Shown: one piece after another, positions 33,781 to 50,929 of the stretch
Layout: each line of letters begins with the position of its first letter
How positions within the stretch are numbered: position 1 is the first letter of the stretch
Virus record (IMG/VR): IMGVR_UViG_3300043570_001980
Location: 62,001 to 126,000 of that record
Direction: 5' to 3' (one strand)
Length of the DNA stretch: 64,000 nt
Program-made: the position numbers and the translations under genes
Notes under the pieces: model-generated
What the model was told of the DNA's origin: nothing
The model's database searches: none
What the model saw: the letters and a program-made list of their open reading frames with translations, nothing else

Positions 33781-35346
33781 ATGGATCTTAAAGAAAATAA
33801 TAGCTCAGTCACGCAGGACAATTTAACAGCACAGCAAAGTGACTATGCTGTGTTTTTGCCTGCTATTAGTAGTTTCTATGCTTCGTATGTGGGCAGGCAA
33901 CGTACTGAACAATATATTGAACCAGCACGTATGCCCACAGCAATCCCTGACATGGAAATGCTTAATTGGCTCAGTCCACAAAAAGGGTTATTTCCATACA
34001 AGTACAGTCTTTACTCAGCGGGTCATGCCAACCTAGATCTGGCCAAGGTAGATCCAAAAGAAGACATGGTTCGAAACAGGGATCCAAACAGTCTCATGAT
34101 TTTGGACTCCGGCGGATTCCAGATAGCCAAGGGTGTATGGCCCGGTCGCTGGGCTGATCCCACAGACAAAGCCGCAGAGAAAAAACGCAGAGCAGTATTA
34201 GAATGGCAATGCGGTCTGGGCACATACGGAATGACCATGGATATTCCAACTTGGACATTCCGTGATCCAAAGGCCGCTGCCGCATGTGGTATTTTTAGCT
34301 ACGACGATGCAGTGAGTGCCACAAAGTACAACAACGAATATTGGATTAAAAATAGACACGGCAATGTCAAGATTCTAAATGTACTGCAAGGTGGTAATCA
34401 TGGAGAGGCCGACCACTGGTACAGTTTGATGAAGGATTACTGCGACCCTTCCAAATACGAACGACCATTTAACGGCTGGGGCATGGGTGGTCAGAACATG
34501 TGTGATGTTCACTTGGTTCTAAAAAGATTAATTACACTAATTCACGATGGTCTATTAGAAGAAGGCCTACATGATTGGATGCACTTTTTAGGTACAAGCA
34601 AACTTGAGTGGGCGTGTTTGCTTACTGATGTTCAACGTGCAGTTAGACGTTATCACAATCCCAAGTTCACCATCAGCTTTGACTGTGCCAGCCCTTTCCT
34701 TGCCACAGCCAATGGACAAATCTACACCAATCTACGTGTGGAAGATAGAGGCAAGTGGTCTTATCAAATGGAACCAACTGCAGATGATAAAAAATATTCT
34801 ATCGACACAAGAAGTTTTAGAGATGCAGTAATACAAGACAAAGTACACAGCTTGTTTGAAGACAGTCCAATTAGTTCAAGAATGGGCATTAAGGATGTTT
34901 GCATTTATAAACCTGGTGATCTTAATAAGATTGGCAAAGAAGGTCGCACATCATGGGATAGTTTTAGCTATGCTTTGATGATGGGGCACAATGTTTGGCA
35001 TCACATTCGAGCAGTACAGGAAGCAAATAGGCAATATGATGCAGGCTTGTTGCCCGGAATGCTTGTCCGAGAAACCTTTGATCGTGTAAAATTTAGGGAC
35101 TTAATAGATAAAATCTTTAGCCTTAAAGACAGACAAAAGAGTCTTGACTTGATTAACCAACATTCGAAGTTTTGGGATCAGATCATAGGCACTAGAGGTT
35201 TTACTGGTAAGAAAACAACCAACGCACATACACAATTTAATAACTTGTTTGAAGTTGAAAGCACCCGGTCATCAGATGAGTTTGATGAATCACTTTTAGA
35301 TCAATTGGAGAATTTAAATGCACAAGGGAAAAATTCGCATGCTTGA
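33781..35346 (+). CDS. dpdA: DNA 7-deazaguanine transglycosylase (TGT-fold, DpdA/DpdA2-like)
   Basis: ILDSGGFQ, MTMD, LNVLQGG, MHFLG, ISFDCASP; folE, queD and queE nearby. Confidence 0.8.
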   Translation: MDLKENNSSVTQDNLTAQQSDYAVFLPAISSFYASYVGRQRTEQYIEPARMPTAIPDMEMLNWLSPQKGLFPYKYSLYSAGHANLDLAKVDPKEDMVRNRDPNSLMILDSGGFQIAKGVWPGRWADPTDKAAEKKRRAVLEWQCGLGTYGMTMDIPTWTFRDPKAAAACGIFSYDDAVSATKYNNEYWIKNRHGNVKILNVLQGGNHGEADHWYSLMKDYCDPSKYERPFNGWGMGGQNMCDVHLVLKRLITLIHDGLLEEGLHDWMHFLGTSKLEWACLLTDVQRAVRRYHNPKFTISFDCASPFLATANGQIYTNLRVEDRGKWSYQMEPTADDKKYSIDTRSFRDAVIQDKVHSLFEDSPISSRMGIKDVCIYKPGDLNKIGKEGRTSWDSFSYALMMGHNVWHHIRAVQEANRQYDAGLLPGMLVRETFDRVKFRDLIDKIFSLKDRQKSLDLINQHSKFWDQIIGTRGFTGKKTTNAHTQFNNLFEVESTRSSDEFDESLLDQLENLNAQGKNSHA

Positions 35347-35524
35347 GGAGTCACACCGTGTGCTCCATGACAAGATTGACACATTAGAAAAGTCGGGTGT
35401 GTACACCGACGAGTTAATGCAAAATCTTAAAAAACAAAAACTAACAGTTTTAGATCAACTGTCAGCACTACGCAAACAACAATACGAATACGAACAAGAG
35501 ATTCCCTGGGATGATGAACGATGA
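35318..35524 (+). CDS. DUF465/YdcH-like coiled-coil protein
   Basis: LEESHRVLHDKI...LKKQKLTVLDQL pattern. Confidence 0.6.
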   Translation: MHKGKIRMLEESHRVLHDKIDTLEKSGVYTDELMQNLKKQKLTVLDQLSALRKQQYEYEQEIPWDDER

Positions 35525-36063
35525 ATCGCGAAGGTCACAATAATATCAAGTTCTTCTTTGGCAAAGAAGTTGAACACACTCCTGCTTATGGAATGAATAC
35601 TCTTTTTGTAGTTGGATTACAATCGCCCAATGACATTAAAGAAATATTAGATGAGCAAAATAGTCACTCAGATTCTACCCAGCGTATAAAACACATTTAC
35701 TTTGGCGCAAATATGAGTTTTCCAATTCATATTGAAACCAATGATGCTGTTTTTTGGAATCCTTGGGAAAAATTAATTCAATACTTTTTAGACCTAGGTT
35801 ATTGGTGTACTCTTGACATTGACCAAAAAAATGTCGAAGGACTGTTGGAAAGCGGATTAGTTGAACATCACTTGTTCATTCCAATGATCAGTGTTAAACT
35901 ACCTTACATCCAACAACTAGGATACAATGCCACAATTAAACTAGATGATAAAGACTTTGCCGCTACCAATCCTGGCGTCTGGTGTCATAGTCTGCATGAG
36001 TTAACAAGGCGCGAAACATTCACTGACTGGACTCAGTATAAAAATGATTCAACGTTTAAATAA
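35521..36063 (+). CDS. Hypothetical protein next to dpdA
   Basis: GKEVEHTPAYG, HIYFGAN, GVWCH; coupled by ATGA. Confidence 0.6.
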   Translation: MNREGHNNIKFFFGKEVEHTPAYGMNTLFVVGLQSPNDIKEILDEQNSHSDSTQRIKHIYFGANMSFPIHIETNDAVFWNPWEKLIQYFLDLGYWCTLDIDQKNVEGLLESGLVEHHLFIPMISVKLPYIQQLGYNATIKLDDKDFAATNPGVWCHSLHELTRRETFTDWTQYKNDSTFK

Positions 36064-36073
36064 GGAAATAAAA

Positions 36074-36265: not shown

Positions 36266-36275
36266 GGAGAAAAAT

Positions 36276-37177: not shown

Positions 37178-37588
37178 ATGGCAACATGGACGCTAAAAAC
37201 GCTACACAAAAAGTCTGCTGTTGAACGACAGTTCTGGTACAAAGACGGCAAAGTAATCATTCGTGAAGAAGGTTATCGTTGGGGCGAGTTCTATTGCGAA
37301 AGCGATGAACAACCTGTTATTGAGCCTGAAGATGGAGAATACAATCTAAGCGAAAGTGATTATGATTGGGAACTGTCAAGTCTTGACGATGGATGTTGGG
37401 CTGATTGGACTTTTCCTGAGGACATGACGGAAGAAGAACAAGCAGAGATTGAAACAGCATGGGATGAAGATTACTTTGATGGCATGGAAGAACTAGGTTG
37501 GTCAAACAATGACACAGATTACATCTTACAAGGACCGCTAGAGTTGACTGATGAAGAAGGCAATGTTGTATATTCAGGAGAAGAATGA
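37178..37588 (+). CDS. Acidic hypothetical protein (paralog of 37764..38243)
   Basis: KTLHKKSAV...EGYRWG...WDEDYFDG...GW. Confidence 0.6.
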   Translation: MATWTLKTLHKKSAVERQFWYKDGKVIIREEGYRWGEFYCESDEQPVIEPEDGEYNLSESDYDWELSSLDDGCWADWTFPEDMTEEEQAEIETAWDEDYFDGMEELGWSNNDTDYILQGPLELTDEEGNVVYSGEE

Positions 37589-38425: not shown

Positions 38426-38718
38426 AATGGTTTTGGAGATATCTTTTTAACAAAATAGATAGAGTTGGCTCTGATTGCGAGGCTGTGCCTGCTCGTAATA
38501 TTAGCAAACACAGTCGACTAATGAATAGTACTGATGATTACCCAGACGGCGGCCTAAATATACAAGTTAAATCTGCTATTGGCGGTAAAATTGTAATCTT
38601 TAGGAACTACGATCAAAGAACAGATAGAACAAACCACACAACTTATATTATCAACAGCGATGAGAATTTTTCTGAATCACTAGGTAAAATTATAACTACT
38701 GAAAGTCTTAAATTATGA
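38422..38718 (+). CDS. Hypothetical protein
   Basis: aagga SD; coupled to the next gene. Confidence 0.6.
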   Translation: MKWFWRYLFNKIDRVGSDCEAVPARNISKHSRLMNSTDDYPDGGLNIQVKSAIGGKIVIFRNYDQRTDRTNHTTYIINSDENFSESLGKIITTESLKL

Positions 38719-39164
38719 ATCAAGAGCAACGAGAAAAAATTGATAGAATTAAACAATATGCAGAACGAAAAATCTGGGTCACGTTCCGCAAAGAAGGCAT
38801 CCACAAGTATCCGGCAGCCTTGGAAGACCCGCAACTAGCAACAGGAGATGAATATGATGTTTCGTTTTTGGGCTATCCTCATCGTCATATTTTTCATTTC
38901 AGGGTTTGGATTGACGTATTCCACAATGACCGAGATGTGGAGTTTATACAATTCAAGCGTTGGCTCGAAAAATTGTATTCTAGCAACCAAGGTGTACTGT
39001 CGTTAGACTACAAGAGTTGCGAAATGATCTCAGACGATCTGTACTTGCAGATTGCCGAAAGGTATCCTGACCGTGCGGTCTGGATTGAAGTGGCCGAAGA
39101 TGGTGAGAACGGCGCTTTGATCAAGTATGAAATTTCTCGCTCAAGTTTGTCAATCAAAATTTAA
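38715..39164 (+). CDS. QueD-paralog T-fold protein (DpdL-like, putative CDG decarboxylase)
   Basis: LGYPHRHIF matches LxxxHRHxF; also SCEMI and EVAEDGENGA, QueD-like C-terminus. Confidence 0.65.
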   Translation: MNQEQREKIDRIKQYAERKIWVTFRKEGIHKYPAALEDPQLATGDEYDVSFLGYPHRHIFHFRVWIDVFHNDRDVEFIQFKRWLEKLYSSNQGVLSLDYKSCEMISDDLYLQIAERYPDRAVWIEVAEDGENGALIKYEISRSSLSIKI

Positions 39165-39390: not shown

Positions 39391-40587
39391 ATGAGAAAAC
39401 TATTCTACATGGGCTTGGAAAGTTACGAAGCCCGTTACACACTACAACTCACTGAATGGAATCGACGTGTATTTGAACGTCGAGGCATTGATGTAGTGTA
39501 TGTTCCTGGATCCACTATAGACAATACTAAAAGTATTAGTGTAGGACAGGTTTTAGACGCACACGGGCGCAGTTACTTTGGCATGAGTCAGATGATGAAT
39601 CTTGTACAGCTGATGCGTAATGGTGAATGCTCAGGAAAAGATGTTGTGTACTTTGAAGACATGTTCCAGCCAGGCATTGAAAGCTTGCCTTATATCATGA
39701 ATCAGATTCCAACAGAACAAAGACCTCGTGTGTATGTTCGTTGTCTGGCACAGGCTATTGATCCCGACGACTTTGTACATGTATGGGGCATGAGCAAGTG
39801 GATGAGTTTGTATGAACAAATGGTCAATGAATTTGTTACAGGTGTACTGGCTACCAACGAAGAAATGGTAGCCCACATGCGTATTGCCAATTGGACTGCA
39901 CCTATCTACAATATTAGCGGTTTAGCATTTGGCAAAGAAGAAGTGTTAGAACGCATAGGTGGCACAGCAAATATCAAACCATTTGCCGATCGTAAAATGC
40001 GGGTAGGGTTTGCCGCAAGATTTGACCAAGAAAAGCAACCAGGTTTCTTTATGGACCTGGCTGAACGTGTTCAAGAAGAACAGCCTCAGATTAGCTTTGC
40101 TATCTTCTCTGGAGGTCCGTTGCGGTCAAACAATAATAATTATGTAAAACGTGCTCGCAAATTACAAGCTAGTGGATTACTTGAGATTCATGAAAACTTA
40201 ACTAAAAATGAGTATTACTCTCTTCTTAATGACACTCGTGTTCTTTTCAATTGTGCTCTTCAAGACTGGGTGTCAAACACAGTTTCAGAAGCTGACACAC
40301 TTGGCGCTAATGTGCTTTACCCTGCTTATCGTAGTTTTCCAGAAACATTTGCTAACGACCTAGACCGTCTGTACATTCCCTGGAGTGAGGATGATGTAGT
40401 TAGAAAACTTAATAATCTATTAGAAAAATCTCATCATAACATTGGTCTCATCAGTGACTGGAACAACGGAACTATTGATAGAATCTGCGATATCATGCAA
40501 GGCAAAGGAGAGCAATGGAATCGTGCAGGCAATCGATATCGAGACCATGTGGCTGGCGCAAAATATAAAGTTAGGAAAGTTGAATGA
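39391..40587 (+). CDS. GT-B glycosyltransferase
   Basis: GFAARFDQEKQP and EADTLGANVLYP, the C-terminal GT-B nucleotide-sugar motif. Confidence 0.75.
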   Translation: MRKLFYMGLESYEARYTLQLTEWNRRVFERRGIDVVYVPGSTIDNTKSISVGQVLDAHGRSYFGMSQMMNLVQLMRNGECSGKDVVYFEDMFQPGIESLPYIMNQIPTEQRPRVYVRCLAQAIDPDDFVHVWGMSKWMSLYEQMVNEFVTGVLATNEEMVAHMRIANWTAPIYNISGLAFGKEEVLERIGGTANIKPFADRKMRVGFAARFDQEKQPGFFMDLAERVQEEQPQISFAIFSGGPLRSNNNNYVKRARKLQASGLLEIHENLTKNEYYSLLNDTRVLFNCALQDWVSNTVSEADTLGANVLYPAYRSFPETFANDLDRLYIPWSEDDVVRKLNNLLEKSHHNIGLISDWNNGTIDRICDIMQGKGEQWNRAGNRYRDHVAGAKYKVRKVE

Positions 40588-41561
40588 ATGTTGACTCTTA
40601 TAAATTAGTAGTAGTTACTGGTGCTGCCGGGTATATCGGTGGACAAACAATGATTTCGTTAAAGCGGTTAGGGTACATAGTTCTTGGAGTTGATCAGAAT
40701 ACGTTGCCCAAACATTTAATGTTGGTACCAAATCAATTCCATCGAGGGGATTTTGCATCTGAGGAAATCATCAATGTCATCGAGGCCGCCAGGCCAGCCG
40801 CGGTCATTCATTGTGCAGGAACTAGTCTAGTTGGACCCAGTGTTAAGAATCCAAAAGAATACTGGAATAATAACATTGCAAAGAACATACAATTTCTGGA
40901 TAGAATTTGTAGTATTCCAGCAGAATATCGTCCCAAAATTATCTTTAGTAGTAGTGCTAGTGTTTATGGTAATCCAATTATGACTCCTTGTCACGAAGTT
41001 GATCCTTGCGAACCAATTAGTCCATATGGAGAAACAAAACGGGCTATGGAATGGATTTTAGAAGGATATAAAGTAGCTTATGGATTAGAATATGTTGCAT
41101 TCCGATATTTCAATGCCTGCGGTGCAGATAGTAAAATACAGCACGGGCAAGCACCCAATGCAACACACATTATTGCTCGTGTGTTAGAGAGTTTACGGGA
41201 TGGTCAAGAATTCACTCTCAATGGTAACAATTATCCCACTGCTGACAAAACCTGCATTAGAGATTACATTCATGTTGAGGACATTGCACATGCACACATA
41301 TTGGCAATTGATGCAGAACTTCCTAGTGGGACTTATAATCTTGGAACCAGTACAGGATCAAGTAATCAGGACATTATCAATTCAGCAGAAAAAATTACAG
41401 GATTAAAACTACAGGTAAAAATAGGTCCACAAAGAGATGGTGATCCGGAGATCCTGACTGCCAGCGCAGATAAATTTAGTTCTTTAACCAATTGGAAACA
41501 GCAGTTTTCACTAGATGATATAATTAAACATGCCTGGCTTTGGTATAATAGAAAACAGTAA
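40584..41561 (+). CDS. galE: UDP-glucose 4-epimerase-like NAD-dependent epimerase
   Basis: TGAAGYIGG, FSSSASVYG, YGETK, FRYFNACGA, IRDYIHV. Confidence 0.9.
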   Translation: MNVDSYKLVVVTGAAGYIGGQTMISLKRLGYIVLGVDQNTLPKHLMLVPNQFHRGDFASEEIINVIEAARPAAVIHCAGTSLVGPSVKNPKEYWNNNIAKNIQFLDRICSIPAEYRPKIIFSSSASVYGNPIMTPCHEVDPCEPISPYGETKRAMEWILEGYKVAYGLEYVAFRYFNACGADSKIQHGQAPNATHIIARVLESLRDGQEFTLNGNNYPTADKTCIRDYIHVEDIAHAHILAIDAELPSGTYNLGTSTGSSNQDIINSAEKITGLKLQVKIGPQRDGDPEILTASADKFSSLTNWKQQFSLDDIIKHAWLWYNRKQ

Positions 41562-42228
41562 ACTTTGGGTATTTGGACAAAGTATGTCCTTGCCTTACAA
41601 TATTGGGTCACCCGAACATGGATGGCCCAATCTTCTTAGTAAAAAGCTAAATATAGAGTACGAAAATTATGCTCAAGCAGGAGCAGATAATTTTTTCATT
41701 TATCATACGTTTTTAGAAAATCTTAACAGAATTACAGACAACGATTTGGTAATAATTGGATGGAGTCACCCATCACGAAAATCCTTTATCATTGACAATG
41801 ATAACCCAGTACACACAGAAGCTATTAAAAAAAGTTTAGTGTATACCACCAAAACAAAACAGTTATTTCGCAGTAATAACAATTTTCTTAACACACAAAA
41901 AAAGTGGTCAACATTGACTCCTACGTCAACTGGGATCAATTTTTATGATAATTGGTTTGACAATTATTATTCGTTATACGAACAAACCTGCAATTTTCTA
42001 AGTTACACCGATAGTGTAAAATTGCGGTGTCCTGGGACTTATGTTCCGTTTTATTTTAGCAAAGAAAGCACACAAGATTTAAAACTTGTTGGTGCTGGAT
42101 ATATGTTGGATTTCATTGTTGACAACAATGTTGCGATAAGTAAAAATGATTGTCACCTTAATGATTATGGTCACCAAATGTGGTCAGAGCATATTTACAA
42201 TTATATAAAAAAATCAAAAAATGCATAA
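41530..42228 (+). CDS. SGNH-like hypothetical protein
   Basis: VFGQS, GWSHPSR, DCHLNDYGH. Start uncertain. Confidence 0.5.
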   Translation: MPGFGIIENSKLWVFGQSMSLPYNIGSPEHGWPNLLSKKLNIEYENYAQAGADNFFIYHTFLENLNRITDNDLVIIGWSHPSRKSFIIDNDNPVHTEAIKKSLVYTTKTKQLFRSNNNFLNTQKKWSTLTPTSTGINFYDNWFDNYYSLYEQTCNFLSYTDSVKLRCPGTYVPFYFSKESTQDLKLVGAGYMLDFIVDNNVAISKNDCHLNDYGHQMWSEHIYNYIKKSKNA

Positions 42229-44101: not shown

Positions 44102-44690
44102 CAAAATATTAAAATTTGAACAAGCTCTAGCAGAGTTTACCGGTGCGCCATATGCAATCATGACTGATTGTTGTACGCATGCTATTGAACTGTGTTTGCG
44201 ATACGATCAAGTCAAGGAGTGCAAGTTTACTCCTTATACCTATTTGAGTATTCCAATGACCATGCACAAGTTAGGTATCAAATACGAGTACCTTGATCAT
44301 GCCTGGCAACGCTGGGTCGGCGAATACCCTTTTGTAGGCACACGCATTTGGGATTCAGCACGTAGACTCGAACAAGATATGTATCGTCCGGACACATTGA
44401 CCTGCCTGAGCTTTGGGCATGGCAAACCACTTCACATTGGTCGTGGTGGTGCTATCTTGCTGGATGATGTCGAAGCCTACAATATCATGCTGGCTCAACG
44501 CTACGACGGCAGAGACTTAGCTATCAAGCCATGGGAATCACAGCAGGTGTTCAAGGTGGGTTATCATTACAAGCCCACCATAGAAGAAGCAGAAATTGGT
44601 TTGGACCTGCTCAACGTAATCAAGGTTAATAGGCCGCAACCCGTGTATGTTGATTATCCAGACTGTAGACAAATAACCATTGAGGATTAA
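44094..44690 (+). CDS. Short DegT/DnrJ-like PLP-dependent protein
   Basis: DCCTHAIELCL, WDSA, LSFGHGKPL..GRGG. Start moved to ATG 44094; only 198 aa. Confidence 0.7.
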   Translation: MFDKILKFEQALAEFTGAPYAIMTDCCTHAIELCLRYDQVKECKFTPYTYLSIPMTMHKLGIKYEYLDHAWQRWVGEYPFVGTRIWDSARRLEQDMYRPDTLTCLSFGHGKPLHIGRGGAILLDDVEAYNIMLAQRYDGRDLAIKPWESQQVFKVGYHYKPTIEEAEIGLDLLNVIKVNRPQPVYVDYPDCRQITIED

Positions 44691-44693
44691 AAA

Positions 44694-45233
44694 ATGTTTG
44701 TACAAAAAATTAAACTAGACTATAATTTTGGTATTTTTCTAAATGCCGACTATACCACACACGAAGATACCTGTATCAAACATCAGGTGACCGAAATGGC
44801 TGACATCTATGCATCCTATGGTGGATTGCCAAAAAGTTACTGTTATGAAAATACTAAAATTAATCAACTTTGGTGGACTCCGGATCAGATAGACTTTATA
44901 GAAATTGGTCAACAGTTAGGTATGGAAATTGTCACTATGTCAAGTATTAGACAACAACCTGGCTGTATAACCACCTTGCACAAAGATACATTCTACCAAA
45001 TTAAAAAACGATTTCCTGAACGTACTGAACTAAAAGTCAGAGCCAATGTCTATTTGGAAGATTACAAATTTGGGCAAATGATTCAATACATTTCCCCGGA
45101 CAATACTTTTGAAACCAGTGTTGGTTGGAAACAGGGCGAGGGCTGGATGTGGGATAGTGATATCCAACATCTAAGCTGTAATGCAGGCATGGAAGACAAA
45201 TATACTCTCCAAATTTCAGGCTTTAGGATTTGA
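44694..45233 (+). CDS. Cupin / 2OG-Fe(II) oxygenase-like protein
   Basis: LHKD (HxD) and a distal HLSCNAG. Confidence 0.55.
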   Translation: MFVQKIKLDYNFGIFLNADYTTHEDTCIKHQVTEMADIYASYGGLPKSYCYENTKINQLWWTPDQIDFIEIGQQLGMEIVTMSSIRQQPGCITTLHKDTFYQIKKRFPERTELKVRANVYLEDYKFGQMIQYISPDNTFETSVGWKQGEGWMWDSDIQHLSCNAGMEDKYTLQISGFRI

Positions 45234-45329: not shown

Positions 45330-46013
45330 ATGTCATACAACAAAACAAAATGCGACCCTGAATTGGGTCTACTAGTACACAAACACTTGGTCAAGTGTGG
45401 TGTAGAAACTCCTACATTTCAACATGCAGTTGATCGTAAAGATAAAATTGAGTTAATCGAAAAAGACTTTAAACATATCATGGAAGTGTTGGGTTTAGAC
45501 CTTAGTGATGATAGTCTAATGGATACACCAAAGCGTGTGGCCAAGATGTATGTTAATGAAATCTTCTGGGGTCTTGACTATGAAGCGTTTCCAAAATGTA
45601 CTACAGTTGACAACAAGATGAAATACGATGAAATGGTTATTGAACGTAATGTCAACGTACAAAGCAATTGCGAACATCACTTTGTTGTGATTGATGGTGT
45701 AGCAACTGTGGGTTACATTCCCAAACAAAAAGTCTTGGGCTTATCTAAGATCAATCGTGTTGTTGAATACTTTAGCAAACGTCCACAAATTCAAGAGCGT
45801 CTGACAGAACAGGTATATCATGCTCTACAATACATTCTTGACACTGATGATATTGCGGTGGTAGTCGATGCTCAACACTATTGTGTAAAGAGTCGCGGCG
45901 TAGAGGACACAGGATCGTCAACAGTTACTAGCAAACTTGGCGGAGTATTCAAGAGTGATCCATCAGTTCGTAACGAGTTTATGAATATTGTTAATGCGTG
46001 TAAAAGAAATTAA
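45330..46013 (+). CDS. folE: GTP cyclohydrolase I
   Basis: DTPKRVAKMY, SNCEHH, GLSK, RPQIQERLT, HYCVKSRG. Confidence 0.95.
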   Translation: MSYNKTKCDPELGLLVHKHLVKCGVETPTFQHAVDRKDKIELIEKDFKHIMEVLGLDLSDDSLMDTPKRVAKMYVNEIFWGLDYEAFPKCTTVDNKMKYDEMVIERNVNVQSNCEHHFVVIDGVATVGYIPKQKVLGLSKINRVVEYFSKRPQIQERLTEQVYHALQYILDTDDIAVVVDAQHYCVKSRGVEDTGSSTVTSKLGGVFKSDPSVRNEFMNIVNACKRN

Positions 46014-46016: not shown

Positions 46017-46709
46017 ATGAATAACGTAAACGAATACAATGTATCCAAATTTAAAGAAGAGTTTCTGAATACAGATTTATACCGGACTCTCGAAAAAGAC
46101 TTTGACCATTTAGTCTGGACCAAACACTGGCCGTATCAAAAACATGCAAGTACTCCTAGACAAATGTGGGGAGATCGGCTACGAGAGACTTATTTTTCTC
46201 TAACACCTTTTTATTATCTAAAACCATTGTTGGAAAAATCTCCGGACACAATATATGATATAGGATGTGGCTGGAATATTTTTAAAAAATATATACCTAA
46301 TATTGTTGGTGTAGATTTCAATGATGACTATCGAGACATTGATGATCAATTTGATGATGAATATGTTAAAAATCATCAACAATATTTTGAATCAGTATTT
46401 TCAATTTGTGCCTTGCATTTTTGTTCATTAACTAAATTTGAGAATCAAATACAACAATTTGTTTCAATGATCAAACCTGGCGGGCGAGGATATCTGGCAT
46501 TAAATTTTCAAAGATTCACTGACTTTACAAGTGAAACTGATTTAATTAAACTTTTTAACACAGCAAAGCCCAACGGTGCAATGTACAATCAGTTTATCCG
46601 TGATGCGTTATCAAATATAGATTGTAATTATTTGATTGTGGACGTTGACATTAGCACTCACAATGAACAAATGGACGGAAATATTCGTATTGTGGTAGAA
46701 GCCAAGTAG
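46017..46709 (+). CDS. Class I SAM-dependent methyltransferase-like protein
   Basis: IYDIGCG motif I; KPGGRGYL. Confidence 0.7.
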   Translation: MNNVNEYNVSKFKEEFLNTDLYRTLEKDFDHLVWTKHWPYQKHASTPRQMWGDRLRETYFSLTPFYYLKPLLEKSPDTIYDIGCGWNIFKKYIPNIVGVDFNDDYRDIDDQFDDEYVKNHQQYFESVFSICALHFCSLTKFENQIQQFVSMIKPGGRGYLALNFQRFTDFTSETDLIKLFNTAKPNGAMYNQFIRDALSNIDCNYLIVDVDISTHNEQMDGNIRIVVEAK

Positions 46710-46790: not shown

Positions 46791-47324
46791 ATGTCAGACA
46801 ATTTTAACGCAGTAGTCGAGCAAAAGTATCGTCCGGTGACCTACAAGTTTACCAGTACCAAAGAGTACATTGATGCATTTCCGTGTGCCTACCGACAGTG
46901 GAGAGCCGACAGTCATTGTAACTTGAATCATGGTTACTCGTTTAGTATGAAGTTTTACTTTGGTACCAACCACCTTGACGTCCGCAACTGGGCCGCTGAC
47001 TATGGTGGTCTCAAAGAACTTAAAAAGATTTTAGAAGATCAATTTGATCACACAACCTTGGTCAGTGCCGATGATCCGGAACTAGAATTCTACAAAGAAA
47101 TGGAACGTCGTAAACTGGCCAAGCTCACAATCTTGCCCCGAGTTGGATGTGAATCACTTGCAGACATGCTGTACAAGTATGTGAACGGTGTTTACATTCC
47201 TGACTTTTGGGGAGAGTACGAAGCAAGTCGTTTATGGTGCTACCGAGTGGAAGTGCGTGAAACACAAGCAAACATGGCTTTTAGAGAAGGCCATAGAGAA
47301 TGGAACGAGGATTTATTTGAATGA
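46791..47324 (+). CDS. queD: 6-carboxytetrahydropterin synthase-like (QueD) protein
   Basis: HCNLNHGY (CxxxHG), DYGGLKELK, FDHTTL, EVRET; strong aggaga SD. Confidence 0.8.
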   Translation: MSDNFNAVVEQKYRPVTYKFTSTKEYIDAFPCAYRQWRADSHCNLNHGYSFSMKFYFGTNHLDVRNWAADYGGLKELKKILEDQFDHTTLVSADDPELEFYKEMERRKLAKLTILPRVGCESLADMLYKYVNGVYIPDFWGEYEASRLWCYRVEVRETQANMAFREGHREWNEDLFE

Positions 47325-48163
47325 AATTAATTGAAATACCAGCTTTAATTTTAGAGCCAAAATATGATGTGGCTGTATTATTACCCACACGAGGACGCAC
47401 AACTGCATTGCTCGATAGTCTAAACAGCCTGATTGACCACGCCGATGATGTAAAATCAATACAAATTTTACTGGGCATGGATGATGATGACACAGAGTCT
47501 ATTGAGTGGGCGGCAAAAAATATTTTTAAAGATTTTGACAGTCGAGGTATTTCAACGTCAATATTGGAATTTAAACCGGTTGGCTACACTCGCTTGAATG
47601 AATATGTAACAGCACTGGCTAAAAAAAGCAATGCACGTTGGTTAATGTTCTGGAACGACGATGCACTCATGCAAACACAGGGCTGGGACAGTCGAATAAA
47701 AGAGCACACCGGTAAGTTTCGTGTGTTGAGAATGCCCACACACAATGAACACCCTTATGCTGTATTTCCAATTGTGCCAAGAGATTGGTTAATGTTATTT
47801 GATTATCTAAGCGCACATCAACTTTCCGACGCATGGATTAGTCAGATTGCCTATATATTGAATATCATGGAAACTATTTCCGTTGATGTACTACACGATC
47901 GACACGACCTAACCGGTAATAATAACGACGAAACTTTTCAGAATAGAATTATGTACGAGGGTCGGCCTGAAGATCCTAGAGACTTTAATCACTTTGACCA
48001 TCGACGTCAACGCTTTTTAGATGCTAGTCGAATTGCTTGGTTTATGCATGCTCGAGGTGAAGATGTTAGTTGGTTTATGAATGTACTGGCAAACAAACAA
48101 GACCCGTGGGTTAGAATGCTTGATGAGTTTGACCCAAATAAACAAATGGCAAAATTTAATTAA
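47321..48163 (+). CDS. GT2-family glycosyltransferase
   Basis: VLLPTRGR, LGMDDDD, FWNDD. Confidence 0.75.
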   Translation: MKLIEIPALILEPKYDVAVLLPTRGRTTALLDSLNSLIDHADDVKSIQILLGMDDDDTESIEWAAKNIFKDFDSRGISTSILEFKPVGYTRLNEYVTALAKKSNARWLMFWNDDALMQTQGWDSRIKEHTGKFRVLRMPTHNEHPYAVFPIVPRDWLMLFDYLSAHQLSDAWISQIAYILNIMETISVDVLHDRHDLTGNNNDETFQNRIMYEGRPEDPRDFNHFDHRRQRFLDASRIAWFMHARGEDVSWFMNVLANKQDPWVRMLDEFDPNKQMAKFN

Positions 48164-48165: not shown

Positions 48166-48936
48166 ATGGACTTACAAAAAAGAATTCTTGACTACTGGAA
48201 CACACAACCATGTAATGTTGGGCACAGTAGTGCTACCATTGGCTCTGAACAGTACTTTGACGAAGTAACAAGCAAACGATATCGTGCTGAACCACACATC
48301 CTTGATTTTGCTGGATTTCACAGTTGGCGAGGTAAACGTGTATTAGAAATTGGATGTGGTATTGGCACGGATGCTGAACAGTTTGCTCGTCACGGTGCCG
48401 AATACGTGGGCATTGATTTGTCAGATGCCAGTTTAGATTTGTGCAAGCAAAGATTCAATGTCTATGACCTCGAAGGTGAGTTTTACAATATTGACATCAC
48501 TGACCGCAAAGTGTTAGACTTAGGACAATTTGATTTGGTCTACAGCTACGGAGTCCTGCATCATTACCCAGGCATGCAAGATCATATTAAAACTGTTGCC
48601 AGTTTGTTAACACCCGACGGCGAGTTTAGATTTATGGTCTATGCCAAAAACTCCTGGAAGTATGCTATGATTCGAAAAGGTCTAGATCAATTTGAAGCTC
48701 AGGCAAATTGTCCTTATGCAGAAGCATATACTTCAGAAGAAATACACGAGTTGCTAAAAGAAGATTTCGATGTGTTACGCTTACGACAAAGTCATTGCTT
48801 TATGTATAATGTAGAAAAATACAAGCAGGGTATTTTTGAACTTGAGCCGTGGTTTGAAGCAATGCCCGAATTAATGAGAGAAGCAGTTAAAGAATATTTA
48901 GGCTGGCATCTTTTGGTAAAAGCAAAGAAGTTATGA
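48166..48936 (+). CDS. Class I SAM-dependent methyltransferase
   Basis: VLEIGCGIG, GIDLS, FDLVYSYGVLHH, LTPDG. Confidence 0.88.
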   Translation: MDLQKRILDYWNTQPCNVGHSSATIGSEQYFDEVTSKRYRAEPHILDFAGFHSWRGKRVLEIGCGIGTDAEQFARHGAEYVGIDLSDASLDLCKQRFNVYDLEGEFYNIDITDRKVLDLGQFDLVYSYGVLHHYPGMQDHIKTVASLLTPDGEFRFMVYAKNSWKYAMIRKGLDQFEAQANCPYAEAYTSEEIHELLKEDFDVLRLRQSHCFMYNVEKYKQGIFELEPWFEAMPELMREAVKEYLGWHLLVKAKKL

Positions 48937-49211
48937 ACTCAAAAATAAACGAAGTGATGGATATCCTCCAGGAAGAGTGTGCTGAGGTTATACAAATTGT
49001 AAGCAAGATACGTAGATTTGGCATAGATGAAATTCATCTGAAACGTGGAATGTCCAATAGAGAAATGTTGTGCGAAGAAGTAGGCGATGTACTGTGCATG
49101 GTTGAATTGCTTAGAGAACTTAAAATTATTGATGATGCTAGTATACAAGCCGCTGTTCAAAATAAAAGAAAAAAGTTACAGCAGTGGTCAACCATATATG
49201 AAAGCCAGTGA
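48933..49211 (+). CDS. MazG-like nucleotide pyrophosphohydrolase
   Basis: EECAE...EEVGDV. Confidence 0.75.
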   Translation: MNSKINEVMDILQEECAEVIQIVSKIRRFGIDEIHLKRGMSNREMLCEEVGDVLCMVELLRELKIIDDASIQAAVQNKRKKLQQWSTIYESQ

Positions 49212-50046
49212 CATCAAATGGCTTCATGTTGAAGCTAGTTCAAAATGCAATGCTTGGTGTCCGGCTTGTCCCAGAAACAACAATGGATATGGATTGAAGC
49301 CAGGACTGGTTGAACAAGATCTTGAAACTGATCGGTTAGCTGATATTCTAAATCAACTGCCAATGTTGGACGGCATACAATTTTGCGGAAACTACGGTGA
49401 TCCAGTGATAGCTCACAATTTTATTGAATTGATTAAACTTGCTAAACGTCACACTCAAAAAATACAAATACATACCAACGGTAGCTTAAGAACTACTGCA
49501 TGGTGGAAAGATTTAGCAAATTTATTAACTGACATCAATCATGACGTTTGGTTTGGTATAGATGGGCTAAAAGGTGTACACGAAATATATCGGCAAGGCA
49601 CAGACTATAACAAAGTAATTGAAAATGCCAAGGCATTTATATCAGCTGGTGGAACAGCAACATGGCAATTTATACCATATGCACACAACGAACATCAGGT
49701 TAAAGATTGTATACGCACTAGCCAAAAACTAGGATTTAAACATTTTAAATTGGTTAAATTATATCGCAATCGTCAATTGGCCAAAAATTATAGAACTGGA
49801 GAGGAATTTGATCTTTTACCACCGGTGGAATTTCAACATCTGATACGTATGCCAAAAATATCAACTGTGGTTGATCCAAAAAATTGTATACATTTATTGC
49901 CGCCTTCGATGTATCTAGCCGCATCAGGAAAACTGAGTACATGTTGTTTTTTTGCTCCAGTAGAAAAATTTGACAGCATTGACGAATTACTGTATAATAA
50001 ACTAGATCTAACACACAATCAGTGTTTGATATCATGTGGAACATAA
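49198..50046 (+). CDS. Radical SAM protein
   Basis: KCNAWCPAC, GNYGDP, HTNG. Start moved to ATG 49198. Confidence 0.8.
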   Translation: MKASDIKWLHVEASSKCNAWCPACPRNNNGYGLKPGLVEQDLETDRLADILNQLPMLDGIQFCGNYGDPVIAHNFIELIKLAKRHTQKIQIHTNGSLRTTAWWKDLANLLTDINHDVWFGIDGLKGVHEIYRQGTDYNKVIENAKAFISAGGTATWQFIPYAHNEHQVKDCIRTSQKLGFKHFKLVKLYRNRQLAKNYRTGEEFDLLPPVEFQHLIRMPKISTVVDPKNCIHLLPPSMYLAASGKLSTCCFFAPVEKFDSIDELLYNKLDLTHNQCLISCGT

Positions 50047-50047
50047 T

Positions 50048-50929
50048 ATGAAAATAAAAGTAAGCGAACTGTTTTACTCCGCACAAGGTGAAGGACGCTT
50101 TGTTGGTGTACCCAGTGTTTTTTTACGCACATTTGGCTGTAACTTTAAATGTGCAGGATTTGGTATGCCCCCAGGGGAAGTGAGTCATGAAGCCACTGAC
50201 ATTGCGGCAACTCACAAATTGATCCAGCCTTTTAAAAAGTTTGAAGACTTGCCATTGGTCAATACCGGCTGTGACAGTTATGCCAGCTGGCATCCGGACT
50301 TTAAAGACCTAAGTCCAACTATTGATAACAATAAGCTGGTAGATCAAATGTTGGCATTGACACCCAATCACAAATGGGTACAAGACAATGGTAATGATGT
50401 ACATTTGGTTATCACAGGTGGTGAGCCGTTGTTGGGATGGCAACGTGCATATGAAGAATTAATTAGTAACCCAAACATGGGAGATTTGCGTAACATTACA
50501 TTTGAAACCAATGGTACTCAAAAATTGCAACCCAGTTTTAAAGATTTCATGCACGAATGGCAACGAGCTCCATTGGGCGGCAAGAAAGATCGCGAAATTA
50601 CATTTTCAGTCAGTGCCAAGCTCAGTGCCAGCGGTGAGAGTTGGGAGGAAGCAATCTGTCCTGACATTGTTGCCAGCTATCAAGCACTAGGCACAGTATA
50701 TCTCAAATTTGTTGTTGAAACCAACGAACATTTTGCAGAAGTAGAACGTGCAGTTAAAGAATTTAGAGCAGGTGGATTTACCGGTGTTGTTTACGTTATG
50801 CCACAGGGTGGTGTGGTTACTCCTTATGCGCAGAATCGTGTTCGTGTGGCAGACTGGGCATGCAGTCGTGGTTATTACTACAGTCCAAGACTACACGTTG
50901 ACCTATGGGGCAACGGATGGGGGAAATAA
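50048..50929 (+). CDS. queE: 7-carboxy-7-deazaguanine synthase
   Basis: SELFYSAQGEG...FLRTFGCNFKC...CDS, ITGGEP, FETNG, SPRLHVDLWG. Confidence 0.92.
   Translation: MKIKVSELFYSAQGEGRFVGVPSVFLRTFGCNFKCAGFGMPPGEVSHEATDIAATHKLIQPFKKFEDLPLVNTGCDSYASWHPDFKDLSPTIDNNKLVDQMLALTPNHKWVQDNGNDVHLVITGGEPLLGWQRAYEELISNPNMGDLRNITFETNGTQKLQPSFKDFMHEWQRAPLGGKKDREITFSVSAKLSASGESWEEAICPDIVASYQALGTVYLKFVVETNEHFAEVERAVKEFRAGGFTGVVYVMPQGGVVTPYAQNRVRVADWACSRGYYYSPRLHVDLWGNGWGK

What the first reader, a model, noticed from the sequence alone, without database searches (positions are those of the whole stretch)
33781..50929. 7-deazaguanine DNA modification pathway with a DpdL-type branch and no queC in the window
Seen: dpdA-like TGT, folE, queD-like, queE, and a second QueD paralog with LGYPHRHIF; no queC or queF in these 64 kb. 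Known: FolE-QueD-QueE give CDG and DpdA inserts deazaguanines into DNA. As I recall (Cui et al. 2023; needs verifying), LxxxHRHxF marks DpdL, which decarboxylates CDG to 7-deazaguanine. Inference: the genome likely carries dDG or a derivative for restriction evasion.
Basis: partly seen in the sequence, partly recalled or inferred. Interest (0 to 1): 0.6.

Follow-up and report, generated by a model that had tools for sequence, protein, structure and literature searches.

The report
Deazaguanine DNA-modification cluster with conserved glycosyltransferase
A giant lake-water phage carries a gene set for swapping the guanine in its DNA for a 7-deazaguanine made without QueC, and that set always includes a sugar-transferring enzyme which the published pathway does not explain, so the final base may be more than plain 7-deazaguanine.

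Summary
Window 33781-50929 encodes a TGT-fold DpdA, FolE, a QueD-like enzyme, QueE and a DpdL paralog carrying LGYPHRHIF. No queC or queF occurs in the window, or in 95-99 % complete genomes of the same and a sister phage (about 342-345 kb, lake water).

But DpdL's decarboxylase activity has never been shown.

DpdL clusters come in two architectures:
- **Type I (phiST-like):** small DpdA3 and no glycosyltransferase. dDG has been measured in this type.
- **Type II (this phage, PA5oct, ACP17, Phosso, BUCT-ZZ01, X1, BCSR5):** a large DSGG[FL]Q DpdA plus a virus-specific GT4 glycosyltransferase, often with a 180-aa unknown protein and a phosphoribosyltransferase.

In 80 independent viral contigs picked only by the GT4, 77 carry DpdL and 71 carry DpdA next to it. 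The misses are contig ends.

In this clade the GT4 is followed by a GalE-type UDP-hexose epimerase, a mini DegT-like protein, a second glycosyltransferase-like protein and methyltransferases.

The product of type II clusters is unknown. PA5oct has a modified G, and ACP17 DpdA+DpdL gave no dDG in E. coli. I rate this a new variant of a known kind, with a testable lead: a sugar-decorated 7-deazaguanine.

The parts
29397..32057 (+). Family B DNA polymerase. This is context: the cluster sits in the replication module.
   Evidence: PF00136 at 5.6e-38 and PF03104 at 1.3e-19. 71-97 % identical and syntenic in 80 related viral loci.
33034..33765 (+). Sliding-clamp-like protein (context).
   Evidence: The family HMM hits the Phosso protein annotated 'DNA polymerase III sliding clamp beta' at 2.5e-50 and PA5oct EST35_0314 at 1.8e-50. 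No Pfam match.
33781..35346 (+). DpdA-like guanine transglycosylase: TGT fold, large DSGGFQ type.
   Evidence: Invariant D109/S110/G112, D154 and D301. AF2 pLDDT 89.1. Foldseek top hits are all TGT at E 4e-7. VIA Z 18.3 over 306 aa against 2ash. hhalign against E. coli Tgt gives 90.6 % and aligns DSGGFQ, MDIP/FDEC and FDCA/FDCV. 939 representative clusters in metagenomes.
35521..36063 (+). 180-aa protein of unknown function ('f180'), a conserved companion of DpdA.
   Evidence: No family or atlas hit. The family HMM hits ACP17 ASD50402, next to that phage's DpdA, at 5e-21. Present in all related loci that reach it and in 56 of 80 loci picked by GT4 alone.
38715..39164 (+). DpdL: QueD paralog and predicted CDG decarboxylase.
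   Evidence: LGYPHRHIF at 38868. phrog_17812 at 1e-35. tblastn: Phosso 70 %, PA5oct 56 %, ACP17 53 % (6e-40), phiST 35 % (9e-10). Invariant H30, H56, H58, H70, E76, E103 and E128 in 14 sequences. hhalign against the phage QueD family gives 91.9 %.
39391..40587 (+). GT4-type (GT-B fold) glycosyltransferase, a signature component of type II clusters.
   Evidence: PF00534 22.6 bits, below cut-off. AF2 pLDDT 70. Foldseek top hits are HepE, BshA, PimA and MshA at E 1e-9. The atlas places it in virus-only GT4 / 'GT4-conflict' clusters. Homologs lie beside DpdL/DpdA in BUCT-ZZ01 (68 %), ACP17, PA5oct, Phosso, X1 and BCSR5. 77 of 80 GT4-selected loci carry DpdL.
40584..41561 (+). GalE-type UDP-hexose 4-epimerase.
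   Evidence: TIGR01179 GalE 279.7 bits against a cut-off of 262.3. PF01370 at 8e-48. phrog_540 nucleotide-sugar epimerase at 1e-58. It follows the GT4 in most related loci.
41530..42228 (+). 232-aa unknown protein; accessory.
   Evidence: Only a weak DUF6071 echo. Found in few relatives.
42221..44101 (+). B12-binding radical SAM enzyme resembling KedN5-type C-methyltransferases; accessory to this sub-clade.
   Evidence: PF04055 at 2e-12 and PF02310 at 7.5e-10. NF033712 at 6e-67 but far below its cut-off. Present only in the nearest relatives and in L033/L036.
44094..44690 (+). Short (198 aa) DegT/DnrJ/EryC1-like protein that keeps the SFGHGKP lysine motif.
   Evidence: PF01041 at 5e-14. PseC and PRK11706 echoes. 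Conserved at this length over the clade at 50-69 % identity. Recurs together with the 179-aa ORF in 3 of the 4 unrelated type II loci that carry it.
44694..45233 (+). 179-aa unknown protein, partner of the DegT-like gene. An HxD...H pattern is visible by eye.
   Evidence: No family hit. Lies close to the DegT-like ORF in L120, L161 and L181.
45330..46013 (+). GTP cyclohydrolase I FolE.
   Evidence: NF006824 326 bits against a cut-off of 202; PF01227 at 8e-63.
46017..46709 (+). 230-aa protein with a weak class I methyltransferase signature; accessory.
   Evidence: PF13489 at 0.009; phrog_4752 at 6e-4.
46791..47324 (+). QueD-like CPH4 synthase, HCxxxHGY variant.
   Evidence: PF01242 53.7 bits. 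phrog_2389 at 1e-34. 49 % identical to ACP17 QueD and 33 % to phiST QueD. The motif aligns to CxxxHGH of 2oba.
47321..48163 (+). 280-aa glycosyltransferase-like protein. DDD-type motifs are visible by eye.
   Evidence: phrog_14945 'glycosyltransferase' at 7e-8. Conserved after QueD over the clade at 39-59 % identity.
48166..48936 (+). SAM-dependent methyltransferase.
   Evidence: PF08242 at 8e-19 and others. phrog_22502 at 3e-62. Conserved in many relatives.
48933..49211 (+). Small MazG-like NTP pyrophosphohydrolase.
   Evidence: PF03819 26.2 bits against a cut-off of 22. phrog_4856 at 1e-21.
49198..50046 (+). Second radical SAM enzyme (CNAWCPAC), function unknown; accessory.
   Evidence: PF04055 at 1e-6. 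phrog_21308 at 1e-28. NCBIfam shows only sub-threshold maturase/twitch echoes.
50036..50929 (+). QueE (CDG synthase) with unusual cysteine spacing.
   Evidence: phrog_2076 at 3e-49, full length. 47 % identical to BUCT-ZZ01 QueE and 29 % to PA5oct QueE. Its N-terminus matches the QueE TIGRFAMs. Cysteine spacing from the alignment.

Best explanation
This is a QueC-independent ('DpdL-branch') 7-deazaguanine DNA-modification module of a roughly 342-kb lake-water jumbo phage. It sits directly downstream of the phage DNA polymerase and clamp.

**Inferred from established family functions:**
- FolE converts GTP to H2NTP.
- The QueD-like enzyme makes CPH4.
- QueE makes 7-carboxy-7-deazaguanine (CDG).

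**Predicted, never shown biochemically:** DpdL removes or alters the carboxyl group to give 7-deazaguanine (DG) or a near relative.

**Inferred from the fold and three conserved catalytic Asp:** the large TGT-fold DpdA exchanges guanine in phage DNA for this base after replication.

**New here:** this module belongs to a second architecture of DpdL clusters. In it the large DpdA and DpdL are invariably accompanied by a virus-specific GT4 glycosyltransferase, usually by a 180-aa unknown protein, and often by a phosphoribosyltransferase. In this clade a GalE UDP-hexose epimerase directly follows the GT4. It comes with a mini DegT-like protein, a second glycosyltransferase-like protein, methyltransferases and, in this phage, a B12 radical SAM enzyme.

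I therefore take the GT4 to be an integral step of the pathway. The end product is more likely a further decorated, probably sugar-bearing, 7-deazaguanine than plain dDG. Its purpose would be to evade restriction.

**My estimates:**
- A 7-deazaguanine replaces G in the DNA: about 0.85.
- The GT4 works in this pathway: about 0.7.
- The final base carries a sugar: about 0.35-0.4.
For: - **Gene identities:**
- **No QueC, QueF or ThyA-like hydroxymethylase in near-complete genomes of the same clade:**
- **Conserved order in 80 related loci and three long genomes:** polB, clamp, DpdA, f180, DpdL, GT4, GalE, DegT-like, FolE, QueD, 280-aa protein, methyltransferase, QueE.
- **GT4 beside DpdA and/or DpdL in seven divergent cultured lineages:**
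- **Independent sample picked only by a 37-44 % identical GT4:** DpdL in 77 of 80 loci, DpdA in 71, FolE in 66, QueE in 55, f180 in 56 and a PRTase in 49. The misses lie at contig ends.
- **The GT4 family is virus-specific.** Among 185,579 species genomes only 9 MAG contigs match, and 7 of them have DpdL adjacent.
- **The GT4 is absent where the combination is absent.** It is missing from DpdL+DpdA3 phages (phiST, D479, Ahp1, RHph_I1_18, Bakedbeans). It is also missing from VH7D (DpdA2+QueC+QueF), 9g and CP220, with ACP17 as the positive control.
- **GalE scores above its equivalog cut-off**.
- **The GT4 has a GT-B/GT4 fold** and is the best-conserved protein of the cluster, at 69-99 % identity.
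- **Literature:**
  - PA5oct DNA resists G-containing restriction sites and is hit by nucleases that sense hypermodified DNA (PMC12191111).
  - ACP17 DpdA+DpdL alone gave no dDG (PMC10516641).
Against: - There are no chemical data for this phage or for any type II phage.
- DG has no hydroxyl or amine at C7 that could accept a sugar in an ordinary way, so the acceptor is unknown.
- The GT4 proteins are acidic (pI 5.4-6.2) and show no obvious DNA-binding character.
- The GT4 scores below Pfam's cut-off and its model is only moderate (pLDDT 70).
- Phage glycosyltransferases and GalE often serve virion or host-surface glycans.
- The sugar-tailoring genes other than the GT4 are clade-specific accessories.
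- The DpdA family lacks the structural Zn site of bacterial DpdA and TGT.
- The QueD variant has HGY in place of HGH.
Confidence: 0.6

Rival explanations
1. The end product is plain dDG, as in phiST. The GT4, GalE and the other sugar genes do not touch the base. Either they serve another target (virion proteins or a host envelope glycan), or the GT4 and f180 are non-glycosylating helpers that the large DpdA needs, as bacterial DpdA needs DpdB.
For: - dDG is the only product ever measured for a DpdL-bearing phage. Examples are phiST, phi19:2 and phi13:1 (PMC10516641), and vibriophage VP1 is reported fully substituted with 7-deazaguanine (10.1101/2025.10.29.685425).
- DG offers no ordinary acceptor group for a sugar.
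- There is a precedent for an obligatory partner that is not physically bound: DpdB (PMC10164549).
- The GT4 proteins are acidic.
Against: - The GT4 tracks the DpdL + large DpdA combination almost perfectly across unrelated phages, and is absent from other phages. That is hard to explain if its target lies outside the pathway.
- A GalE directly follows the GT4, which argues for real sugar transfer.
- VH7D's large DpdA2 works in E. coli without any such helper (PMC10516641).
- ACP17 DpdA+DpdL gave no dDG.
Confidence: 0.3
2. The modified base enters DNA at the nucleotide level. A deazaguanine base is turned into a nucleotide (by a PRTase where one is present), processed to the dNTP and incorporated by the phage polymerase, while MazG clears competing nucleotides. 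The TGT-like protein has a secondary or proofreading role.
For: - A phosphoribosyltransferase sits in 49 of 80 type II loci, and next to QueE in PA5oct, BUCT-ZZ01 and relative G003.
- A MazG-like gene is present here and in phiST.
- The cluster abuts the DNA polymerase.
Against: - This phage and its 99 % complete sister have no PRTase.
- DpdA is universally retained with intact catalytic Asp.
- The PRTase could simply recycle the guanine released by base exchange.
- All tested deazaguanine DNA systems act after replication (PMC10516641).
Confidence: 0.1
3. The pathway makes a soluble glycosylated pterin or deazapurine metabolite, or modifies tRNA rather than DNA. The combination FolE + PTPS-family enzyme + SDR + GT4 resembles cyanobacterial tetrahydrobiopterin-glucoside synthesis, and TGT enzymes classically act on tRNA.
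For: - From my own knowledge of BH4-glucoside synthesis: it uses FolE, a PTPS-family enzyme, an SDR and a group-1 glycosyltransferase.
- The GT4 is 68 % identical to that of a Synechococcus elongatus phage.
- The phage encodes tRNAs.
Against: - QueE and a TGT-fold enzyme are constant members of the cluster, and neither has a role in pterin glycoside synthesis.
- The SDR is a GalE equivalog, not a sepiapterin reductase.
- The GT4 motif scan matched no genome of a cultured bacterium.
- None of the five tRNAs in the window has a GUN anticodon.
- In PA5oct it is the DNA that is modified at G.
Confidence: 0.05

Closest known systems
Cellulophaga phage phiST dDG system (DpdA3, DpdL, FolE, QueD, QueE, MazG; Cui et al. 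2023, PMC10516641)
   Same: - FolE, an HGY-type QueD, QueE, DpdL with LxxxHRHxF and a MazG-like gene.
- No QueC.
- Located next to the replication genes.
   Different: - phiST uses the small (259 aa) DpdA3, which has no detectable similarity to the 521-aa protein here.
- phiST has no GT4, f180, GalE or other sugar genes.
- dDG has been measured only in this type.
ACP17, PA5oct, Phosso, BUCT-ZZ01, X1 and BCSR5 clusters (type II; ACP17 is named as a DpdL carrier in Cui et al. 2023, the others were identified here)
   Same: - The same core: a large DSGG[FL]Q DpdA, a GT4 and DpdL, plus FolE and QueE (QueD only where it lies in the locus).
- The 180-aa protein is shared with ACP17.
- The DpdA is 34 % identical to PA5oct EST35_0316.
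   Different: - This clade adds GalE, a mini DegT-like protein, a 280-aa GT-like protein and methyltransferases. This phage also adds a B12 radical SAM enzyme, a second radical SAM enzyme and a Bax1-I protein.
- It lacks the PRTase found in PA5oct and BUCT-ZZ01.
- None of these clusters has a chemically identified product.
Vibrio phage VH7D DpdA2 system (dPreQ1 / mdPreQ1)
   Same: VH7D gp012 (458 aa, DSGGLQ) is 35 % identical to the ACP17-type DpdA. It is weakly hit by this family's profile at 2.9e-4.
   Different: VH7D has QueC, QueF and DpdM, and has neither DpdL nor the GT4. The family here is a more distant sister of DpdA2.
Bacterial Dpd system (DpdA/DpdB/DpdC; PMC10164549)
   Same: A TGT-fold DNA transglycosylase with three invariant Asp that needs or keeps a partner protein.
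   Different: - The bacterial system inserts preQ0 made through QueC.
- Its partner is a ParB-like ATPase.
- Its DpdA has a CXCX2CX22H zinc site, which is not conserved here.
Glucosyl-hydroxymethylcytosine of T-even phages, and mannosyl/galactosyl-queuosine of eukaryotic tRNA (the latter from my own knowledge)
   Same: A nucleic-acid base is first replaced or modified and then glycosylated from a nucleotide sugar. From memory, the enzyme that makes mannosyl-queuosine is also a GT4-family enzyme acting on a 7-deazaguanine.
   Different: Those acceptors have a hydroxyl group. No hydroxymethylase exists here. No glycosylated purine is known in DNA. This resemblance is a lead, not a tested relation.

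Membership tests
DpdA / TGT superfamily DNA-guanine transglycosylase | (beta/alpha)8 TGT fold | tested here: met
   AF2 pLDDT 89.1. Foldseek top >=50 hits are all TGT at E 4e-7. VIA Z 18.3 over 306 residues.
DpdA / TGT superfamily DNA-guanine transglycosylase | Three invariant active-site aspartates: general acid/base, base-binding and nucleophile (PMC10164549) | tested here: met
   D109, D154 and D301 are invariant or >=90 % conserved in 53 sequences. They align to the DSGGFQ, FDEC and FDCV motifs of E. coli Tgt (hhalign 90.6 %).
DpdA / TGT superfamily DNA-guanine transglycosylase | Structural zinc site CXCX2CX22H, conserved in bacterial DpdA and TGTs | tested here: not met
   No cysteine column is invariant or nearly invariant in alignment A1. 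The family is therefore a distinct branch, not a bacterial-type DpdA.
DpdA / TGT superfamily DNA-guanine transglycosylase | Exchanges guanine in DNA (not tRNA) for a 7-deazaguanine | not testable with these tools
   Context only: it lies beside polB and the clamp, it co-occurs with FolE and QueE, and PA5oct DNA is modified at G.
DpdA3 subfamily (phiST gp042) | Sequence relationship to phiST / CP220 DpdA3 | tested here: not met
   BLASTP of phiST gp042 against all ORFs of the record gives a best E of 0.55. The A1 profile finds nothing in phiST or CP220. DpdA3 homologs are found instead in the GT4-less DpdL phages.
DpdA2 subfamily (VH7D gp012) | Sequence relationship to the validated VH7D enzyme | tested here: inconclusive
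   The profile hit covers only the catalytic core, at E 2.9e-4, and BLASTP is not significant at 0.36. ACP17, BUCT-ZZ01 and X1 DpdA are clear DpdA2 relatives at 3e-42 to 3e-50.
DpdL (Cui et al. 2023) | Signature LxxxHRHxF replacing QueD's CxxxHGH | tested here: met
   LGYPHRHIF. L52, H56, H58 and F60 are invariant in 14 DpdL sequences. The definition was checked in PMC10516641.
DpdL (Cui et al. 2023) | QueD / T-fold paralogy and homology to phiST CGPG_00067 and the ACP17 protein | tested here: met
   tblastn: ACP17 6e-40, phiST 9e-10. hhalign of the DpdL family against the phage QueD family gives 91.9 % at E 7e-7 over the C-terminal half. Pfam PTPS itself gives no hit.
DpdL (Cui et al. 2023) | [quoted passage not shown] | tested here: met
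   (95-99 % complete genomes).
DpdL (Cui et al. 2023) | CDG decarboxylase activity | not testable with these tools
   This is also unproven in the literature: heterologous expression gave no dDG.
QueD (CPH4 synthase) | PTPS fold family above cut-off, and the CxxxHGH motif | tested here: inconclusive
   PF01242 scores 53.7 against 22.4, but TIGR03367 is below its cut-off. The motif reads HCNLNHGY, as it does in phiST, ACP17 and BUCT-ZZ01.
QueE (CDG synthase) | QueE-type radical SAM enzyme with a three-cysteine cluster motif | tested here: inconclusive
   phrog_2076 at 3e-49 over the full length. All QueE TIGRFAMs are below cut-off. The cysteines are spaced CX3C...39 aa...C, as in BUCT-ZZ01 and PA5oct.
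FolE (GTP cyclohydrolase I) | Equivalog model above cut-off | tested here: met
   NF006824 326.2 against 202; TIGR00063 247.7 against 181.6.
GT4 retaining glycosyltransferases (GT-B) | GT-B fold with a C-terminal nucleotide-sugar-binding domain | tested here: met
   Foldseek hits HepE, BshA, PimA and MshA at E 1e-9 and TM 0.5-0.67, on a model of pLDDT 70. R210/E214/K215 and E300 are invariant across five lineages. Pfam PF00534 scores 22.6 bits, below its 26.4 cut-off.
GT4 retaining glycosyltransferases (GT-B) | Sugar transfer to a defined acceptor | not testable with these tools
   Donor and acceptor are unknown. The adjacent GalE suggests a UDP-hexose donor.
GalE (UDP-glucose 4-epimerase) | Equivalog model above cut-off | tested here: met
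   TIGR01179 279.7 against 262.3.

The most novel reading that the evidence does not exclude
Type II DpdL clusters make a glycosylated 7-deazaguanine in DNA, which would be the first sugar-bearing purine in a genome. DpdL (perhaps with the 180-aa protein) creates the handle, the large DpdA installs the base, and the virus-specific GT4 adds a hexose from a UDP sugar supplied by GalE. Clade-specific enzymes (mini-DegT, B12 radical SAM, methyltransferases, a second glycosyltransferase) would then diversify the sugar. This would explain two published results: ACP17 DpdA+DpdL gave no dDG in E. coli, and PA5oct behaves as hypermodified.
Probability: 0.3. Interest if true: 0.85.

Novelty: new variant of a known kind. 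Interest (0 to 1): 0.62.

Why it matters
Phage 7-deazaguanines are a major route of escape from restriction and CRISPR. They are also targets of newly found defences, namely END nucleases and Dag glycosylases.

The published scheme for the QueC-independent branch (CDG to DG by DpdL, then DpdA) could not be reconstituted. This analysis offers a concrete reason and a test. In one large, environmentally abundant architecture, a dedicated glycosyltransferase and a 180-aa protein are obligatory neighbours of DpdA and DpdL. That architecture covers thousands of metagenomic homologs, lake jumbo phages, the therapeutic candidate PA5oct, and rhizobial, Xanthomonas, Burkholderia and cyanobacterial phages.

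Several of these phages are in culture, so a single LC-MS experiment plus a GT4 knockout could settle the question. The outcome would be either a new DNA base or a new accessory requirement for DNA transglycosylation.

Tried and rejected
- **Pfam TGT (PF01702).** It finds nothing in this record, Phosso, phiST or ACP17. The model is too insensitive for phage DpdA, so this is not evidence of absence.
- **Megablast of the 17-kb span against GenBank phages.** No match.
- **QueC candidates.** The 277-aa PP-loop ORF is NadE (PF02540 at 5e-50). The 343-aa PP-loop ORF has only sub-threshold PP-loop echoes. Neither is accepted as QueC.
- **QueF echo in G001 and G002.** This is FolE itself, through T-fold homology.
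- **A hydroxymethyl-pyrimidine acceptor for the GT4.** No ThyA-family gene is present in three near-complete genomes.
- **Complex prediction of DpdA (residues 10-470) with the GT4.** Score 0.00, so no verdict. It counts neither for nor against binding.
- **Atlas search for the 180-aa protein.** No usable hit.
- **Profile of the DpdA family against PDB sequences.** Only non-significant TGT rows at E about 3. The fold search and hhalign superseded it.
- **Isoelectric points as a hint of DNA binding.** Uninformative, because DpdA is itself acidic.
- **Supplementary tables of Cui et al.** They are not held, so the DpdA subfamily the authors assigned to ACP17 could not be read.
- **Tools and codes not used.** Read laying was not used. 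No other genetic code was used.

Full report
**Setting.** The window is bases 62692-126691 of a 128,804-bp IMG/VR virus record that CheckV rates 35 % complete. A 341,990-bp record (G001, 95 % complete) carries an identical DpdA and identical neighbours. A 345,154-bp record (G002, 99 % complete) is 96 % identical in DpdA. The phage is therefore a jumbo phage of about 342-345 kb. Its DNA is found in lake-water metagenomes from many studies. Nearly all genes in the window are on the + strand.

**Checking the observation: FolE, QueD, QueE and DpdL.**
- FolE (45330-46013) scores far above NCBI's equivalog cut-off.
- The QueD-like protein (46791-47324) passes Pfam PTPS and matches the phage QueD PHROG at 1e-34.
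- QueE (50036-50929) is weak against bacterial TIGRFAMs but matches the phage QueE PHROG over its full length at 3e-49. It is 47 % identical to the annotated QueE of cyanophage BUCT-ZZ01.
- The second QueD paralog (38715-39164) carries LGYPHRHIF.
- Cui et al. 2023 define DpdL by exactly this change, from QueD's CxxxHGH to LxxxHRHxF (PMC10516641).
- The protein is 53 % identical to ACP17 DpdL and 35 % to phiST DpdL.
- The histidines and glutamates are invariant in 14 DpdL sequences.
- Profile-profile comparison relates the DpdL family to the phage QueD family at 91.9 % probability.

**Checking the observation: DpdA.** The 521-aa ORF at 33781-35346 has no hit in Pfam, PHROGs or NCBIfam. Because the word search and family scans left it open, I used the exhaustive representative search, which found 939 clusters.
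- The family alignment shows an invariant DSGG.Q motif and two further conserved aspartates.
- The AlphaFold model is confident (pLDDT 89).
- Every top PDB match is a tRNA-guanine transglycosylase.
- hhalign against E. coli Tgt aligns the motifs in order: DSGGFQ, MDIP/FDEC, QGG, GWGMGG/GYAVGG, FLG/LMG and FDCA/FDCV.
- The zinc-site cysteines that define bacterial DpdA and TGT (PMC10164549) are not conserved.

**Absence of queC and queF.** In the window there is none. In the whole record and in G001 and G002 the only QueC-like echoes are a NadE and an unassigned PP-loop protein, both below cut-off. The only QueF echo is FolE.

**What else is in the span.** Between and around the five named genes lie:
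- a 180-aa unknown protein (35521-36063);
- a Bax1-I membrane protein and two acidic paralogs;
- a GT4-type glycosyltransferase (39391-40587), with a GT-B fold and best matches HepE, BshA, PimA and MshA;
- a GalE UDP-hexose 4-epimerase above its equivalog cut-off (40584-41561);
- a 232-aa unknown protein;
- a B12-binding radical SAM enzyme;
- a 198-aa DegT-like protein;
- a 179-aa unknown protein;
- a weak methyltransferase-like protein;
- a 280-aa glycosyltransferase-like protein;
- a SAM methyltransferase;
- a 92-aa MazG;
- a second radical SAM enzyme.

Upstream are a family B DNA polymerase and a clamp-like protein. Downstream are a sugar-phosphate nucleotidyltransferase-like protein and a FEN/RNase H.

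**Conservation within the clade.** In 80 IMG/VR loci found through DpdA (67-100 % identity) and in three long genomes, the order is conserved: polB, 314-aa protein, clamp, DpdA, f180, DpdL, GT4, GalE, DegT-like, FolE, QueD, 280-aa protein, (methyltransferase), QueE. The B12 radical SAM enzyme, the 232-, 179- and 230-aa proteins, MazG, the second radical SAM enzyme and Bax1-I are accessories. The GT4 is the best-conserved protein of the cluster, at 69-99 % identity, with thousands of metagenomic homologs above 80 %.

**Two architectures of DpdL clusters.** tblastn with DpdL finds 28 GenBank phages. I inspected the neighbourhoods of eleven of them and searched with family profiles.
- **Type I:** phiST, D479, Ahp1, RHph_I1_18 and Bakedbeans have DpdL with a DpdA3 homolog nearby. 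They have no member of the large-DpdA or GT4 families anywhere in the genome.
- **Type II:** this clade, PA5oct, Phosso, ACP17, BUCT-ZZ01, X1 and BCSR5 have DpdL, a 416-547-aa DpdA with DSGG[FL]Q, and the GT4. The three are adjacent, except in Phosso, where DpdA lies elsewhere.
- The ACP17, BUCT-ZZ01 and X1 DpdAs are 33-35 % identical to VH7D gp012. I take gp012 to be the experimentally validated DpdA2 of Cui et al., because it is the only TGT-like ORF the profile finds in VH7D and it lies beside FolE, QueF and QueC.
- The family of this phage, PA5oct and Phosso is a more distant sister of DpdA2.
- The GT4 family is absent from VH7D (DpdA2 with QueC and QueF), 9g (DpdA1) and CP220 (DpdA3), with ACP17 as the positive control.

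**An independent test of the association.** I scanned IMG/VR with an alignment of the ACP17-, PA5oct-, Phosso-, X1- and BCSR5-type GT4s. I kept the 80 best loci, which are 37-44 % identical to ACP17's GT4 (apart from ACP17's own IMG/VR record, L113) and so lie outside this phage's clade.
- Within 8 kb of the GT4, DpdL is present in 77 loci, a DpdA in 71, FolE in 66, QueE in 55, f180 in 56 and a phosphoribosyltransferase in 49.
- The three loci without DpdL have the GT4 within 1.4 kb of a contig end.
- Among one genome for each of 185,579 prokaryote species, only nine contigs match. All are from MAGs, and seven have DpdL next to the GT4.
- The GT4 is therefore a virus-specific, cluster-specific gene and not a wandering surface-glycan enzyme.

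**Interpretation.** What follows from established family functions is the production of CDG from GTP and base exchange in nucleic acid by a TGT-fold enzyme. The target is inferred to be DNA, from three things: the position in the replication module, the behaviour of all tested phage systems (PMC10516641), and PA5oct's resistance to enzymes with G in their sites together with its sensitivity to nucleases that sense modified G (PMC12191111).

DpdL as a decarboxylase is the literature's prediction, not a demonstrated fact. The authors could not obtain dDG from ACP17 or phiST DpdL+DpdA in E. coli and suggested that other enzymes may be needed. The GT4 and f180 are the obvious candidates for those enzymes in type II clusters.

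Three points argue that the GT4 really transfers a sugar within this pathway:
- a GalE directly follows it in this clade;
- no hydroxymethyl-pyrimidine pathway exists to provide another DNA acceptor;
- further sugar- or amine-tailoring genes come and go in type II clusters of different clades.

The chemical acceptor is unknown, and DG has no ordinary acceptor group. This is the main weakness of the idea. The alternatives are plain dDG with the GT4 acting as a helper or acting elsewhere, a nucleotide-level route using the PRTase, a pterin glycoside, or a tRNA target. They are listed with their evidence under the rival explanations. A structure-based test of DpdA-GT4 binding gave no verdict.

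**Novelty.** In the searchable literature I could not find the split into two architectures, or the obligatory GT4/f180 companions of the large DpdA. The library lacks many subscription papers, and the supplementary tables of Cui et al. are not held, so prior mention cannot be excluded. I rate it a new variant of a known kind, with a moderately probable and readily testable route to a new DNA base.

Noticed in passing
window 50036-50929; L007 4233-5093; L006 13707-14579: QueE here and in BUCT-ZZ01 and PA5oct has its radical-SAM cysteines spaced CX3C, then about 39 residues, then C (GCNFKC ... TGCDS). ACP17 and Phosso QueE keep the canonical CX3CX2C.
   Followed up: partly
window 46791-47324 (motif about 46914-46940): The QueD-like proteins of this phage, ACP17, phiST, BUCT-ZZ01 and RHph_I1_18 all read HCxxxHGY instead of QueD's CxxxHGH, so one presumed zinc-ligand histidine is replaced by tyrosine.
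   Followed up: partly
window 44094-44690 and 44694-45233: The DegT/EryC1-like protein is only 198 aa, about half the normal length, yet keeps the SFGHGKP lysine motif and is conserved at this size. In three of the four unrelated type II loci that carry it, it travels with the 179-aa ORF, which shows an HxD...H pattern by eye.
   Followed up: partly
window 39391-40587 vs L007 10001-11167: The GT4 is 68 % identical to that of the T4-like cyanophage BUCT-ZZ01. By contrast DpdL is 36 % identical, QueE is 47 %, and the two DpdAs are not BLAST-detectable relatives. This suggests gene exchange or extreme constraint on the GT4.
   Followed up: partly
L102 8649-9077 (G003:197649-198077); L006 13202-13636; L007 5093-5554: A phosphoribosyltransferase sits next to QueE in relative G003, PA5oct and BUCT-ZZ01, and in 49 of 80 GT4-selected loci. 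It is absent from this phage and its closest sister. It could recycle released guanine or make a deazaguanine nucleotide.
   Followed up: partly
L111 6338-6871; L112 6158-6805: Xanthomonas phage X1 and Burkholderia phage BCSR5 carry a PAPS-reductase-family PP-loop protein inside their type II clusters. The two proteins are 42 % identical to each other.
   Followed up: no
L096 9212-10363: In Vibrio phage Bakedbeans the DpdL domain is the C-terminal part of a 383-aa annotated protein, so it looks like a fusion with an unknown N-terminal domain.
   Followed up: no
window 36276-36971, 37178-37588, 37764-38243: A Bax1-I family membrane protein (PF01027 at 6e-54) and two acidic paralogous ORFs (E 2e-9 to each other) lie between DpdA and DpdL, but only in the nearest relatives.
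   Followed up: no
G000:C1 38388-39221 and 28923-29954 (upstream of the window): The record encodes a NadE NAD synthase and a 343-aa PP-loop (SGGLDSS) protein of unassigned family.
   Followed up: partly
window 28787-29380; 51449-52051; 52199-52903; 52910-53917: A ClpP protease lies upstream of polB. Downstream of QueE lie a RfaE-domain-II-like sugar-phosphate nucleotidyltransferase, a DUF6071 protein and a 5'-3' exonuclease.
   Followed up: no
window 56874-57125 and 63694-63937: Five tRNA genes are present: Met-CAT, Leu-TAA, Arg-TCT, Ser-GCT and Glu-TTC. None has a GUN anticodon.
   Followed up: no
L193, L195 (Haliscomenobacter MAG), L194 (Chitinophagales MAG): Contigs of this phage clade are binned into Bacteroidota MAGs (Haliscomenobacter, Chitinophagales) and others. 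This is probably mis-binning, but it could be a weak hint at the host.
   Followed up: no
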